Source of the DNA: Octopus sinensis
Taxonomy: Eukaryota
Length of the DNA: 44,192 nt
Reading direction: 5' to 3'
NCBI RefSeq assembly: GCF_006345805.1
Contig: NW_021834917.1
Coordinates: 1-44,192 of the forward strand
Part shown: positions 13,201 through 18,347 of the stretch, in pieces
Layout: every line of letters starts with the position of its first letter
Position numbering within the stretch: position 1 is the stretch's first letter
The notes under the pieces: generated by a model
Databases searched by the model: none
What the model saw: the letters and a program-made list of their open reading frames with translations, nothing else
Told to the model about the DNA's origin: nothing
Program-made: the position numbers and the translations under genes

Positions 13201-13470
13201 ATCATCATCATCATCATCATCATCATCGTTTAACGTCCGCTTTCCGCGCTAGCACGGGTTGGACGGTTTGACCGGGTCTGGGAAGCCAGGGGCCGCTCCA
13301 GGCTCCAGTCTGAATCTGGCAGAGTTTCTACGGCTGGATGCCCTTCCTAACGCCAACCACTCCGTGAGTGGATTGGGTGCTTTTTACGTGCCACCTGCAC
13401 AGGGGCCGGAGGGTCCGGCATCGTCACGATCGGATTCGAGCATTTTAACGTGTCAGCGGCACGGGGGCAA
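13201..13470 (-). mobile_element. RTE LINE 3' end (divergent subfamily) with (GAT)n tail
   Basis: (ATC)n GTTTAACGTCCG...GGATGCCCTTCCTAACGCCAACCACTCC matches the reverse complement of the 3' end of the RTE at 29705-33479. Confidence 0.85.
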
Positions 13471-13873
13471 CGAGGTCCGGGGTACTTTGGGGATTGGGGT
13501 ATTTTGGGGATCCGGGGTACTTAGAATGGGTAGGGGGGTACTTAGAATGGGTAGGTGACGAGGCGGGAGGGTACTAAAAGGGGATGGTCGGATTGAGGCA
13601 GTGTCAGGAGGAAGCGTAAGATCGGTGGGCAGTTGATGAGCTATGGCGCTAGCAGCTTGTCTTAGCATATGAGGAGAAGTGGTAGTGGGAGGAGGAGGAG
13701 GTAGGGCGTACCCAGTGTAGATGAGTAAGGTGTATCCGGTGTAGATAGAGAGAACGGGGTATACTGGTATTGGTGGTGGGGGGTGGGTGAGAACAGTGTT
13801 CAACGTATTGGTGGTGGGGGTGGGGTGAGAACAGTGTTCAACGGTATTGGTGGTGGGGGTGGGGGGCGGGCGC

Positions 13874-16800
13874 ACCGCCAATGACTGAAAGATGGGAAAA
13901 AGATGGGATTACGGCTTGAGGCAGCTGCGGTTCTTTAATTGTAGAGAGAGAGATAGGAAGATAAATCAAGTTATGGCGAAGGCTTGAAAGTATCTTAAAA
14001 AAGGTTAAATTTTCGTAACAGTGTATGAATAAACGTATTAACAACGAATAAAAAATATAGTAAGATAAATTTTTTAAGAACTTGCTGCGGTCATCGAGCG
14101 GGAGTTGAAATTGAAGAAGAAAGTAGTTGAACTGGGAATTTAAATTGCAGAATCGTAATAGTAATAGTAATGGCGGTTTTCAAGTTTTAGCATATGAAGA
14201 AGAAGAGGAGGAAAAAGAAGACCGCCAATGACTGAAAGATGGGAAAAAGATGGGATTACGGCTTGAGGCAGCCTGCGGTTAAATATTGTAGAGAGAGAGA
14301 TAGGAAGATAAATCAAGTTATGGCGAAGGCTTGAAAGTATCTTAAAAAAGGTTAAATTTTCGTAACAGTGTATGAATAAACGTATTAACAACGAATAAAA
14401 AAATATAGTAAGATAAATTTTTTAAGAACTTGCTGCGGTCATCGAGCGGGAGTTGAAATTGAAGAAGAAAGTAGTTGAACTGGGAATTTAAATTGCAGAA
14501 TCGTAAGTAATAGTAATAGTAATGGCGGTTTTCAAGTTTTAGCATATGAAGAAGAAGAGGAGGAAAAAGAAGACCGCCAATGACTGAAAGATGGGAAAAA
14601 GATGGGATTACGGCTTGAGGCAGCCTGCGGTTAATATTGTAGAGAGAGAGATAGGAAGATAAATCAAGTTATGGCGAAGGCTTGAAAGTATCTTAAAAAA
14701 GGTTAAATTTTCGTAACAGTGTATGAATAAACGTATTAACAACGAATAAAAAAATATAGTAAGATAAATTTTTTAAGAACTTGCTGCGGTCATCGAGCGG
14801 GAGTTGAAATTGAAGAAGAAAGTAGTTGAACTGGGAATTTAAATTGCAGAATCGTAATAGTAATAGTAATGGCGGTTTTCAAGTTTTAGCATATGAAGAA
14901 GAAGAGGAGGAAAAAGAAGACCGCCAATGACTGAAAGATGGGAAAAAGATGGGATTACGGCTTGAGGCAGCCTGCGGTTAAATATTGTAGAGAGAGAGAT
15001 AGGAAGATAAATCAAGTTATGGCGAAGGCTTGAAAGTATCTTAAAAAAGGTTAAATTTTCGTAACAGTGTATGAATAAACGTATTAACAACGAATAAAAA
15101 ATATAGTAAGATAAATTTTTTAAGAACTTGCTGCGGTCATCGAGCGGGAGTTGAAATTGAAGAAGAAAGTAGTTGAACTGGGAATTTAAATTGCAGAATC
15201 GTAATAGTAATAGTAATGGCGGTTTTCAAGTTTTAGCATATGAAGAAGAAGAGGAGGAAAAAGAAGACCGCCAATGACTGAAAGATGGGAAAAAGATGGG
15301 ATTACGGCTTGAGGCAGCCTGCGGTTAAATATTGTAGAGAGAGAGATAGGAAGATAAATCAAGTTATGGCGAAGGCTTGAAAGTATCTTAAAAAAGGTTA
15401 AATTTTCGTAACAGTGTATGAATAAACGTATTAACAACGAATAAAAAATATAGTAAGATAAATTTTTTAAGAACTTGCTGCGGTCATCGAGCGGGAGTTG
15501 AAATTGAAGAAGAAAGTAGTTGAACTGGGAATTTAAATTGCAGAATCGTAATAGTAATAGTAATGGCGGTTTTCAAGTTTTAGCATATGAAGAAGAAGAG
15601 GAGGAAAAGAAAAAAGAAGACCGCCAATGACTGAAAGATGGGAAAAAGATGGGATTACGGCTTGAGGCAGCCTGCGGTTAAATATTGTAGAGAGAGAGAT
15701 AGGAAGATAAATCAAGTTATGGCGAAGGCTTGAAAGTATCTTAAAAAAGGTTAAATTTTCGTAACAGTGTATGAATAAACGTATTAACAACGAATAAAAA
15801 ATATAGTAAGATAAATTTTTTAAGAACTTGCTGCGGTCATCGAGCGGGAGTTGAAATTGAAGAAGAAAGTAGTTGAACTGGGAATTTAAATTGCAGAATC
15901 GTAATAGTAATAGTAATGGCGGTTTTCAAGTTTTAGCATATGAAGAAGAAGAGGAGGAAAAAAGAAGGACCGCCAATGACTGAAAGATGGGAAAAAGATG
16001 GGATTACGGCTTGAGGCAGCCTGCGGTTAAATATTGTAGAGAGAGAGATAGGAAGATAAATCAAGTTATGGCGAAGGCTTGAAAGTATCTTAAAAAAGGT
16101 TAAATTTTCGTAACAGTGTATGAATAAACGTATTAACAACGAATAAAAAATATAGTAGATAAATTTTTTAAGAACTTGCTGCGGTCATCGAGCGGGAGTT
16201 GAAATTGAAGAAGAAAGTAGTTGAACTGGGAATTTAAATTGCAGAATCGTAATAGTAATAGTAATGGCGGTTTTCAAGTTTTAGCATATGAAGAGAGAAG
16301 AGGAGGAAAAAGAAGACCGCCAATGACTGAAAGATGGAAAAAGATGGGATTACGGCTTGAGGCAGCCTGCGGTTAAATATTGTAGAGAGAGAGATAGGAA
16401 GATAAATCAAGTTATGGCGAAGGCTTGAAAGTATCTTAAAAAAGGTTAAATTTTCGTAACAGTGTATGAATAAACGTATTAACAACGAATAAAAAATATA
16501 GTAAGATAAATTTTTTAAGAACTTGCTGCGGTCATCGAGCGGGAGTTGAAATTGAAGAAGAAAGTAGTTGAACTGGGAATTTAAATTGCAGAATCGTAAT
16601 AGTAATAGTAATGGCGGTTTTCAAGTTTTAGCATATGAAGAAGAAGAGGAGGAAAAAGAAGACCGCCAATGACTGAAAGATGGGAAAAAGATGGGATTAC
16701 GGCTTGAGGCAGCCTGCGGTTAAATATTGTAGAGAGAGAGATAGGAAGATAAATCAAGTTATGGCGAAGGCTTGAAAGTATCTTAAAAAAGGTTAAATTT

Positions 16801-18347
16801 TCGTAACAGTGTATGAATAAACGTATTAACAACGAATAAAAAATATAGTAAGATAAATTTTTTAAGAACTTGCTGCGGTCATCGAGCGGGAGTTGAAATT
16901 GAAGAAGAAGAAAGTAGTTGAACTGGGAATTTAAATTGCAGAATCGTAATAGTAATAGTAATGGCGGTTTTCAAGTTTTAGCATATGAAGAAGAAGAGGA
17001 GGAAAAAGAAGACCGCAATGACTGAAAGATGGGAAAAAGATGGGATTACGGCTTGAGGCAGCCTGCGGTTAAATATTGTAGAGAGAGAGATAGGAAGATA
17101 AATCAAGTTATGGCGAAGGCTTGAAAGTATCTTAAAAAAGGTTAAATTTTCGTAACAGTGTATGAATATAAACGTATTAACAACGAATAAAAAATATAGT
17201 AAGATAAATTTTAAGAACTTGCTGCGGTCATCGAGCGGGAGTTGAAATTGAAGAAGAAAGTAGTTGAACTGGGAATTTAAATTGCAGAATCGTAATAGTA
17301 ATAGTAATGGCGGTTTTCAAGTTTTAGCATATGAAGAAGAAGAGGAGGAAAAAGAAGACCGCCAATGACTGAAAGATGGGAAAAAGATGGGATTACGGCT
17401 TGAGGCAGCCTGCGGTTAAATATTGTAGAGAGAGAGATAGGAAGATAATCAAGTTATGGCGAAGGCTTGAAAGTGAAAAAGTATCTTAAAAAAGGTTAAT
17501 TTTCGTAACAGTGTATGAATAAACGTATTATTAACAACGAATAAAAAAATATAGTAAGATAAATTTTTTAAGAACTTGCTGCGGTCATCGAGCGGGAGTT
17601 GAATTGAAGAAGAAGTAGTTGAACTGGGAATTTAAATTGCAGAATCGTAATAGTAATAGTAATGGCGGTTTTCAAGTTTTAGCATATGAAGAAGAAGAGG
17701 AGGAAAAAGAAGACCGCCAATGACTGAAAGATGGGAAAAAGATGGGATTACGGCTTGAGGCAGCCTGCGGTTAAATATTGTAGAGAGAGAGATAGGAAGA
17801 TAAATCAAGTTATGGCGAAGGCTTGAAAGTATCTTAAAAAAGGTTAAATTTTCGTAACAGTGTATGAATAAACGTATTAACAACGAATAAAAAAATATAG
17901 TAAGTAATAAATTTTTTAAGAACTTGCTGCGGTCATCGAGCGGGAGTTGAAATTGAAGAAGAAAGTAGTTGAACTGGGAATTTAAATTGCAGAATCGTAA
18001 TAGTAATAGTAATGGCGGTTTTCAAGTTTTAGCATATGAAGAAGAAGAGGAGGAAAAAGAAGACCGCCAATGACTGAAAGATGGGAAAAAGATGGGATTA
18101 CGGCTTGAGGCAGCCTGCGGTTAAATATTGTAGAGAGAGAGATAGGAAGATAAATCAAGTTATGGCGAAGGCTTGAAAGTATCTTAAAAAAGGTTAAATT
18201 TTCGTAACAGTGTATGAATAAACGTATTAACAACGAATAAAAAATATAGTAAGATAAATTTTTTAAGAACTTGCTGCGGTCATCGAGCGGGAGTTGAAAT
18301 TGAAGAAGAAAGTAGTTGAACTGGGAATTTAAATTGCAGAATCGTAA
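13874..18347. repeat. Tandem array of a 347-bp unit, about 12.8 copies
   Basis: Unit starts ACCGC(C)AATGACTG at 13874, 14221, 14573, 14920, 15267, 15620, 15969, 16316, 16662, 17012, 17358, 17713, 18063; last copy partial. Confidence 0.97.

What the first reader, a model, noticed from the sequence alone, without database searches (positions are those of the whole stretch)
13201..18347. A 347-bp satellite-like array fused to an RTE 3' tail: possible retrotransposon-carried satellite (SVA-like composite)
Seen: read on the minus strand the block is about 13 x 347-bp units, a 400-bp spacer, an RTE 3' end and a (GAT)n tail, with TA-rich microsatellite on both sides. The RTE modules grade into the spacer with no clear junction. 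The spacer shares TTAGCATATGA(G/A)GA with the array unit (about 13662 vs every unit). The flanks share a degenerate direct repeat (CATACATACATATATATATACATA at about 13157 and 18371). Known: RTE machinery mobilises RNAs carrying its 3' end. Inference: the whole 5.1-kb block inserted as one retrotransposed RNA, either an RTE subfamily with a huge tandem-repeat 3' UTR or a non-autonomous VNTR element, which would spread satellite seeds around the genome.
Basis: partly seen in the sequence, partly recalled or inferred. Interest (0 to 1): 0.75.

Follow-up and report, generated by a model that had tools for sequence, protein, structure and literature searches.

The report
Tandem-repeat block ending in RTE tail
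A 5.1-kb block made of a 347-bp tandem array, a G-rich spacer and the 3' recognition end of an RTE-type jumping gene sits inside a TA microsatellite and was probably put there in one RTE-driven copying event, but with only this one locus available it cannot be shown to belong to a spreading, satellite-seeding family.

Summary
The anatomy is real. There are 12.8 copies of a 347-bp unit (13874-18347), a 403-bp G-rich spacer (13471-13873), a 243-bp RTE 3' end (13228-13470) and (ATC)9 (13201-13227). The element therefore lies on the minus strand, with TA-rich microsatellite at both outer ends.

The tail is a genuine RTE 3' end. The same sequence closes a near full-length EN+RT element in this window (29705-33480). 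Its last ~55 nt recur at RTE ends in three loci from other sources, one of them Argonauta hians, and fold into a stem-loop supported by covariation, which the block keeps.

Two sub-claims weaken. The RTE similarity does not grade into the spacer: it stops at 13470, where base composition also breaks. The flank repeat exists but is only marginally above TA-microsatellite background (P about 0.04-0.06).

I favour one RTE-mediated insertion of a composite RNA into a TA microsatellite (about 0.55), with much of the array length possibly added later in situ. The main rival is a truncated RTE copy landing beside an older array.

No other copy of the unit or spacer could be found. The source genome is not in any searchable collection, so the SVA-like family claim is untested. 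This is a new variant of a known kind, if true. Interest is moderate.

The parts
13105..13200 (.). Left TA-rich microsatellite. Its last 67 bp (13134-13200) are the candidate target-site duplication copy that abuts the 3' tail.
   Evidence: TRF. Aligning 13134-13200 with 18348-18414 gives a 27-nt identical core, P about 0.04-0.06 against other TA microsatellites.
13201..13227 (-). (GAT)9 terminal microsatellite of the element, read as (ATC)9 on the plus strand.
   Evidence: TRF reports 100% matches. The same tail ends five other copies in the window.
13228..13470 (-). RTE 3' UTR end, from a distinct subfamily about 85% identical to the young copies in the window.
   Evidence: blastn. nhmmer gives E = 4e-51 to the 3' UTR of the full RTE, with the boundary at 13470. 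Alignment A1.
13234..13265 (-). Two-part 3' stem-loop of the RTE tail, kept in the block through an A-U to G-C exchange and a U-G wobble.
   Evidence: fold_alignment. Pair counts on 11 sequences from the window and loci L001-L003: 93.5% of cells paired, 4 pairs changed on both sides, 0 of 500 shuffles as good.
13471..13873 (-). Spacer. On the plus strand it is G-rich and C-poor. It is built partly of short tandem repeats (17-21 bp at 13476-13555, 38 bp x 2.6 at 13766-13864). It shows no RTE similarity and a weak colinear similarity to the array unit.
   Evidence: TRF, composition, tests against RTE, tests against the unit.
13874..18347 (-). Array of 12.8 x 347-bp units. It has 35% GC, plus-strand C of 0.09 and CpG observed/expected of 1.47. 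The units are nearly identical, and the distal unit is cut at unit position 284.
18348..18580 (.). Right TA-rich microsatellite. 18348-18414 is the candidate target-site duplication copy that abuts the 5' end of the block.
29705..33480 (+). Comparator: a near full-length RTE-like LINE. It has decayed EN and RT frames and an ORF stop near 32590. Its 890-bp 3' UTR holds a 186-bp x 2.7 tandem repeat (32739-33256). It ends in the same tail plus (GAT)n and is flanked by TA repeats.
   Evidence: Frame translations. Pfam finds RVT_1, a weak Exo_endo_phos_2 match and PHD. TRF. Homologue search finds 1275 RT hits.
29237..29597 (-). Comparator: a 5'-truncated copy of the same RTE family, with a 58-bp target-site duplication (29179-29236 = 29598-29655, 55 of 58 identical) that abuts both ends exactly.
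21610..21865 (+). Comparator: a 5'-truncated copy of the same RTE family (256 bp).

Best explanation
The block is the product of one RTE-driven target-primed reverse transcription event on the minus strand.

Proposed steps:
1. An RTE endonuclease nicked a TA-rich microsatellite.
2. The reverse transcriptase engaged an RNA through the RTE 3' stem-loop and (GAT)n end.
3. It copied through the 243-nt RTE tail into non-RTE sequence: the C-rich spacer and then at least part of a 347-nt repeat.
4. It stopped inside a repeat unit, as in ordinary 5' truncation.

The copied RNA was therefore a composite of foreign tandem-repeat sequence joined to an RTE 3' end. Three sources are possible: an RTE subfamily with a replaced, repeat-bearing 3' UTR, a non-autonomous composite element, or a one-off template-switch chimera.

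The present 4.5-kb, nearly homogeneous array probably owes part or most of its length to later unequal exchange or replication slippage at this locus.

Shown: the anatomy, the identity and structural conservation of the tail, and the position of the outer ends in TA repeats.

Inferred: the single event, its direction, and the composite RNA.
For: - The tail is the 3' end of an EN+RT element present in the window.
- Its terminal stem-loop is conserved with covariation in 11 sequences, including RTE ends from other sources (L001, L002, Argonauta hians L003). The block keeps it through a compensatory change.
- Two of the three young copies of this family (the full element and the 29237-29597 copy) lie in TA repeats at both ends, and the latter has an exact-register 58-bp duplication. 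The third (21610-21865) has TG/TA-rich microsatellite only beyond its 3' end.
- For the block, TA-rich sequence abuts 13200 and 18348, the ends of the whole block. In the register a target duplication requires (67 bp), the two flanks share a 27-nt identical core.
- TA microsatellites cover only about 3% of the window (summed).
- Nothing TA-rich and no duplication lies at the inner junction at 13470.
- Tail, spacer and array all escape the CpG depletion of their surroundings (observed/expected 0.95, 0.85 and 1.47 against 0.62). The (ATC)9 run is uninterrupted. Both fit one young insertion.
- The full RTE in the window carries tandem repeats in its 3' UTR, and an older copy has 66-bp modules x 3.5.
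Against: - The flank similarity is not clearly above that of unrelated TA microsatellites.
- The spacer and unit show no RTE similarity, and composition breaks sharply at 13470. That is equally what two independent sequences lying side by side would show.
- The block is longer than the autonomous element, and the other copies in the window are short.
- No second copy of the unit, the spacer or the junction was found, but the genome of origin is not in any collection I could search.
Confidence: 0.55

Rival explanations
1. Chance juxtaposition. The spacer and 347-bp array were already at this locus next to a TA microsatellite. A 5'-truncated, 270-bp RTE copy later inserted at the microsatellite edge, with a target deletion or no duplication.
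For: - RTE tails are frequent: at least six in 44 kb.
- They favour TA microsatellites. About four of 14 TA arrays in the window abut one.
- RTE similarity ends abruptly at 13470 with a composition break.
- Short 5'-truncated copies of 120-360 bp are the norm here.
- One other copy (21610-21865) also lacks microsatellite sequence at its 5' junction.
Against: - It requires a duplication-free insertion exactly at the edge.
- It also requires a second coincidence: the far end of the array abutting TA-rich sequence that shares a 24-27-nt core with the left flank.
- No TA sequence lies between tail and spacer.
Confidence: 0.25
2. Single insertion of a short composite, followed by local growth. The inserted cDNA carried the tail, the spacer and only one or two 347-nt units. 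The 12.8-copy array arose afterwards by unequal exchange. This is a variant of the best explanation that denies that a satellite-sized array was ever carried in RNA.
For: - The units are nearly identical and differ mainly by indels.
- CpG observed/expected is 1.47 in the array.
- The block exceeds the 3.8-kb autonomous element.
- The spacer looks like a much-diverged edge copy of about half a unit (13554-13728 against unit 215 to 25, P about 0.007). That is the pattern expected of in-situ homogenisation.
- Another dispersed repeat has formed a 184-bp x 4.7 array locally at 4982-5852.
Against: Nothing in the window argues against it. It cannot be separated from carriage of a long array without other copies or alleles.
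Confidence: 0.3
3. Assembly artefact. The array length or the joins are products of mis-assembly of a repeat.
For: Differences between units are mostly homopolymer or microsatellite indels, a pattern also produced by long-read errors.
Against: - The unit phase is regular.
- Both junctions are unique sequence.
- The first unit next to the spacer carries its own variant cluster.
- No reads are available to test this.
Confidence: 0.05

Closest known systems
SVA / LAVA composite VNTR retrotransposons of hominoids, mobilised in trans by L1 (PMC3287187; own knowledge)
   Same: Both have an internal tandem-repeat (VNTR) block joined to a 3' module that gives access to a LINE machinery. In both, flanking duplications would surround the whole composite, and 5' truncation is common.
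   Different: - The partner here would be an RTE-type LINE that recognises a specific 3' stem-loop and (GAT)n, not poly(A).
- The unit is 347 bp and AT-rich, not 35-50 bp and GC-rich.
- No 5' hexamer or SINE-like head is seen.
- Only one copy is known, so family status is untested.
RTE/BovB-tailed SINEs, such as Bov-tA and other SINEs that share the 3' end of an RTE (own knowledge: Malik and Eickbush 1998; Okada's 'stringent' LINE-SINE pairs)
   Same: A non-RTE body is fused to an RTE 3' end, which supplies recognition by the reverse transcriptase.
   Different: No pol III head was found: there are no tRNA or Rfam hits. The body is a kilobase-scale tandem array rather than a 100-300-bp unit.
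Tandem repeats in the 3' UTR of retrotransposons that seed satellites: Ogre LTR elements giving PisTR-A, L1 3' end giving the cetacean satellite, CR1 giving HinfI (PMC7004042, PMC9659126)
   Same: In both, a hypervariable 3' UTR next to the element's end holds tandem repeats that can expand into arrays. The full RTE in this window shows the small-scale version (186 bp x 2.7).
   Different: In those cases the repeat is demonstrably part of many element copies. Here the 347-bp unit has no detectable similarity to the RTE and no second copy is known.
Helentron-carried satellite-like arrays in the oyster Crassostrea gigas (PMC7492417)
   Same: In both, short satellite-like arrays in a mollusc genome would be dispersed by a non-autonomous mobile element.
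   Different: That is a DNA rolling-circle element. The block's ends are not Helitron-like: there is no 5' TC...CTRR 3' and no 3' hairpin before the terminus (read).
Octopus RTE elements such as RTE-2_OV, whose 3' UTR is mostly microsatellite (PMC9115989)
   Same: Both are RTE-type LINEs of cephalopods with a simple-repeat 3' end. The window's RTE tail also occurs in Argonauta hians.
   Different: The RT here has a PHD-like finger after the RT domain, and its best database relatives are only 61% identical.
LINE template-switch chimeras, such as U6-L1 chimeric retrocopies (own knowledge: Buzdin et al. 2002)
   Same: A 5'-truncated LINE 3' part is fused to a copy of another RNA, the junction is sharp, and one duplication surrounds the whole.
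   Different: Those are one-off events with small RNAs. Here the 5' partner would be a transcript of a tandem array.

Membership tests
RTE-clade LINE (the tail 13201-13470 as an RTE 3' end) | The sequence is the 3' end of an element that encodes an APE-type endonuclease followed by a reverse transcriptase in one reading frame. | tested here: met
   85% identity over 263 bp to the end of the 29705-33480 element. That element translates to EN and RT pieces, with Pfam RVT_1 and a weak Exo_endo_phos_2 match.
RTE-clade LINE (the tail 13201-13470 as an RTE 3' end) | The 3' terminus is a short tandem repeat rather than poly(A). | tested here: met
   (GAT)9 in the block. (GAT)n or (ATG)n in the other window copies and in L001 and L002.
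RTE-clade LINE (the tail 13201-13470 as an RTE 3' end) | The RT falls in the RTE clade in a phylogeny of LINE reverse transcriptases. | not tested
   No reference RT set was available. The best hits are unnamed ENA proteins at 61% identity or less, plus Argonauta hians and Hydractinia 'hypothetical' proteins. The RTE label rests on architecture and tail type.
Stringent LINE/non-autonomous partner pair | The shared 3' end has a conserved secondary structure that the RT could recognise. | tested here: met
   Two helices, 93.5% of cells paired, 4 pairs with changes on both sides, 0 of 500 shuffles as good, and slid controls at 24-44%. Recognition itself is inferred.
SVA-like composite VNTR retrotransposon family | Many dispersed copies have the same module order and the same module junctions. 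| not testable with these tools
   There is no other copy in the window or in L001-L003. Exact and homology protein look-ups and DNA pattern scans were all empty. The RT search shows the source genome is absent from the collections.
SVA-like composite VNTR retrotransposon family | A target-site duplication flanks the whole composite. | tested here: inconclusive
   In the 67-bp register there is a 27-nt identical core and a global score of 39. P is about 0.04-0.06 against other TA microsatellites.
SVA-like composite VNTR retrotransposon family | A defined 5' module or promoter is present. | tested here: inconclusive
   The block ends inside a repeat unit at 18347. If a 5' module exists, this copy has lost it.
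SINE | An internal pol III promoter head derived from tRNA, 5S or 7SL is present. | tested here: not met
   ARAGORN and Rfam found nothing in the window.
Satellite DNA | Long arrays occur at one or many loci and the unit is abundant in the genome. | not testable with these tools
   Only this 4.5-kb array is visible, with no other unit in 44 kb. On present evidence it is a macro-/minisatellite-scale array.

The most novel reading that the evidence does not exclude
A cephalopod genome holds an active, RTE-dependent composite retroelement. This would be an invertebrate counterpart of SVA that uses a stem-loop/(GAT)n recognition end instead of poly(A). Its body would be a 347-nt tandem repeat, so each insertion plants a ready-made array that can grow into a satellite.
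Probability: 0.2. Interest if true: 0.7.

Novelty: new variant of a known kind. Interest (0 to 1): 0.45.

Why it matters
How satellite repeats reach new chromosomal sites is a long-standing question. Carriage inside mobile elements is documented for LTR elements in plants, for Helentrons in oysters and for SVA in apes. It is not documented for the RTE clade, which recognises a specific RNA 3' end. A family of RTE-tailed arrays would give a clean, testable system for satellite seeding in cephalopods, whose genomes are dominated by LINEs, SINEs and simple repeats. If this turns out to be a one-off chimera or a chance neighbour, it is an ordinary by-product of dense RTE activity in TA microsatellites.

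Tried and rejected
- **Other copies through proteins.** Exact look-ups of the array ORF and the spacer ORF found nothing. Homology searches with the array ORF, and with the spacer ORF plus the antisense tail ORF, found nothing.
- **Other copies through DNA patterns.** Scans of JGI metagenomes (two), GTDB genomes and IMG/VR found nothing. A sequence-string search of papers found nothing.
- **Orthologous empty site through a host gene.** No convincing host exon exists in the 44 kb. Every sizeable ORF is TE- or microsatellite-derived.
- **Spacer as decayed RTE modules.** Rejected. nhmmer with maximum sensitivity and shuffled local alignments give no signal.
- **Spacer as an A-to-G hyper-edited copy of the unit.** Rejected. 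Purine-collapsed alignments are no better than shuffles.
- **Helitron or Helentron carrier.** Rejected from the termini.
- **Overall flank alignment as a target-site duplication.** The score of 109 is matched by unrelated TA microsatellites (108 and 100), so only the register-specific core is retained as weak evidence.
- **Dating the 186-bp duplication of the full RTE against the split from its sister copy.** Uninformative: 95.2% identity between units against 96.4% between copies.
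Full report
**What is there**

Tandem Repeats Finder reports a 347-bp array at 13874-18347 with 12.8 copies and 97% matches. It also reports a perfect (ATC)9 at 13201-13227 and TA-type microsatellites at 13105-13202 and 18359-18580. The raw sequence agrees.

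Splitting the array on a unit anchor gives 13 units of 346-355 bp. They differ almost only by indels in homopolymer or GAA/GAG runs. The unit next to the spacer has its own 10-nt variant cluster. The distal unit is cut at unit position 284, directly against TA-rich sequence.

Between array and tail lies a 403-bp spacer (13471-13873). It contains small tandem repeats of 17-21 bp and 38 bp x 2.6.

**The tail is an RTE 3' end**

blastn and nhmmer show that 13201-13470 matches five other places in the window. These are 29235-29495, 33219-33479 and 21610-21865 at about 85% identity, plus older fragments at 34283-34403 and 34830-34951.

The copy ending at 33479 is the end of a near full-length element on the plus strand (about 29705-33480). 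Its layout is as follows:
- Decayed endonuclease and reverse-transcriptase frames, with a stop near 32590.
- Pfam RVT_1 on two pieces, a weak Exo_endo_phos_2 match and a PHD-type finger.
- An 890-bp 3' UTR that contains a 186-bp x 2.7 tandem repeat (32739-33256), followed by the shared tail and (GAT)n.

An older copy at 34830-35560 has 66-bp modules x 3.5. Clade membership of the RT was not tested phylogenetically.

**The tail is conserved and structured**

A homologue search with the RT ORF gave 1275 hits, but none above 61% identity. One hit comes from the octopod Argonauta hians. So the source genome and its close relatives are not in the collection.

Three loci were fetched through those hits: two contigs from ENA metagenome assemblies and one A. 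hians chromosome. All carry the same roughly 55-nt terminal sequence. In L001 it lies at the end of the RTE ORF, at 88-91% identity to the window's tails.

An alignment of 11 tails supports a two-helix stem-loop just upstream of UUAAAC-(GAU)n (alignment A3):
- 93.5% of cells are paired.
- Four pairs changed on both sides.
- 0 of 500 shuffles reached the observed values.
- Slid controls pair at only 24-44%.

The block's tail keeps the inner helix through an A-U to G-C exchange and a U-G wobble. It shares several states with the older copies rather than the young ones. I read its 15% divergence as a subfamily difference rather than decay. This fits its undepleted CpG (observed/expected 0.95) and its uninterrupted (ATC)9.

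**Where the RTE part stops**

The similarity ends at 13464-13470. No RTE module or ORF similarity is detectable in the spacer (z of 2.3 or less).

Base composition also breaks at that point. Plus-strand C is 0.28 in the tail, 0.10 in the spacer and 0.09 in the array. GC content then falls from 0.56 in the spacer to 0.35 in the array.

So the modules do not 'grade' into the spacer. The spacer and array share a strand asymmetry and belong together. The tail is a different entity joined to them.

The TTAGCATATGA motif shared by spacer and unit is real. It extends to a weak colinear similarity over 13554-13728 against unit positions 215 to 25 (P about 0.007 with two scoring schemes). This suggests that the spacer includes a much-diverged edge copy of the repeat.

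**One insertion or two neighbours?**

The window offers controls.
- The 361-bp copy at 29237-29597 has a 58-bp duplication (29179-29236 against 29598-29655, 55 of 58 identical) that abuts both of its ends exactly.
- The full element has TA repeats at both ends.

This family therefore inserts into TA microsatellites and can make long duplications.

For the block, TA-rich sequence abuts 13200 and 18348, which are the ends of the whole 5.1 kb. Those strings occur nowhere else in the window.

This support is weak. Against other TA microsatellites of the window it is only marginal (P about 0.04 for the core, 0.06 for the global score). The unconstrained flank alignment is no better than background.

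The structural argument is stronger:
- TA microsatellites cover about 3% of the window (summed).
- No TA sequence or duplication lies at the inner junction at 13470.
- A stand-alone insertion of the tail would therefore need both a duplication-free event exactly at a microsatellite edge and a coincidental TA repeat at the far end of the array.

Against the single-event reading, three points count:
- RTE tails are common here and like TA repeats.
- One copy (21610-21865) also lacks microsatellite sequence at its 5' end.
- The sharp junction is equally what juxtaposition predicts.

I put one RTE-mediated event at about 0.55 and juxtaposition at about 0.25.

**How much array was carried**

Several features point to recent amplification or homogenisation at this locus:
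- The block (5.1 kb) is longer than the autonomous element (3.8 kb).
- The other copies in the window are 120-360 bp.
- The units are nearly identical.
- The array has no CpG depletion (observed/expected 1.47 against 0.62 for the window).
- The spacer looks like a diverged edge unit.

Local array formation from a dispersed repeat is seen elsewhere in the window. The 184-bp x 4.7 array at 4982-5852 is built from a SINE-like element with at least eight scattered copies.

The inserted RNA may therefore have carried only one or a few units. Nothing in the window can separate this from carriage of a long array.

**What could not be done**

No other copy of the unit, the spacer or the junction could be sought:
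- Exact and homology protein look-ups were empty.
- DNA pattern scans were empty.
- A sequence-string search of papers was empty.
- The window has no host exon that could anchor an orthologous locus.

**Comparison with known systems**

The closest known systems are listed below.
- SVA/LAVA composites mobilised by L1 (PMC3287187).
- RTE-tailed SINEs (own knowledge).
- Retrotransposon 3' UTR tandem repeats that seed satellites (PMC7004042, PMC9659126).
- Helentron-carried arrays in oysters (PMC7492417).
- Template-switch chimeras (own knowledge).
- Octopus RTEs with a microsatellite-rich 3' UTR, which are described (PMC9115989).

An RTE-tailed array would work like SVA in principle, but through a stem-loop/(GAT)n recognition end. 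Membership in any 'family' is untested because the defining feature, multiple copies with the same junctions, could not be examined. It is not a SINE, because no pol III head was found.

**Verdict**

- If true, this is a new variant of a known kind.
- Interest is 0.45.
- The most novel reading, an active RTE-dependent VNTR composite family that seeds satellites, has a probability of about 0.2.

Noticed in passing
window 29705-33480 (+): A near full-length RTE-like LINE with decayed EN and RT frames and a PHD-type zinc finger after the RT domain. Its 890-bp 3' UTR contains a 186-bp x 2.7 tandem repeat, and the element is flanked by TA repeats.
   Followed up: yes
window 29179-29236 and 29598-29655: An unusually long 58-bp target-site duplication (55 of 58 identical) abuts both ends of a 361-bp truncated RTE copy. 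A third copy of the same roughly 46-bp motif follows at about 29644-29704, next to the 5' end of the full RTE.
   Followed up: partly
window 4982-5852: A 184-bp x 4.7 tandem array (94% matches) made of a dispersed SINE-like repeat. That repeat has at least eight other copies in the window, for example at 24959-25143, 28007-28169, 36941-37103 and 43443-43608. This shows local array formation from an interspersed element.
   Followed up: partly
L001 6174-6236; L002 about 7826-7890; L003 2739-2798, 3013-3060, 7678-7736: The roughly 55-nt RTE terminal stem-loop plus UUAAAC-(GAU)n is conserved at 81-91% in loci from other sources, one of them Argonauta hians. In L001 and L002 it lies at or just downstream of the RTE ORFs. 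The RT proteins are only about 58-61% identical, so the RNA end appears more constrained than the protein.
   Followed up: yes
window 34951-35157 (+), inside the old RTE tail copy 34830-35560: A nested insertion of the 3' end of a second LINE family. Its ORF ends ...DREVWRSIVNSIVSTTVEQ* directly in a (TGA)n tail, and it has an 8-bp duplication, AGGTTTCT. A related ORF fragment lies at 9239-9505 (-).
   Followed up: partly
window 40200-40800 (-): ORF fragments that look like a Tc1/mariner transposase remnant (for example ...DSAPCHTSRRTQSWLLDNF...). This was not checked against Pfam.
   Followed up: no
whole window: No convincing host exon lies in the 44 kb. The sequence is almost entirely SINE-like repeats, LINE fragments and microsatellites ((TA)n, (AGAT)n, (TATC)n, (TATG)n, (CA)n). 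Rfam and tRNA scans found nothing. The SINE-like repeats are absent from the three loci fetched from other sources.
   Followed up: partly
window 9681-10083: A 209-bp x 1.9 tandem duplication of another dispersed repeat. Copies lie at 10548-10720, 36064-36200 and 36698-36830.
   Followed up: no
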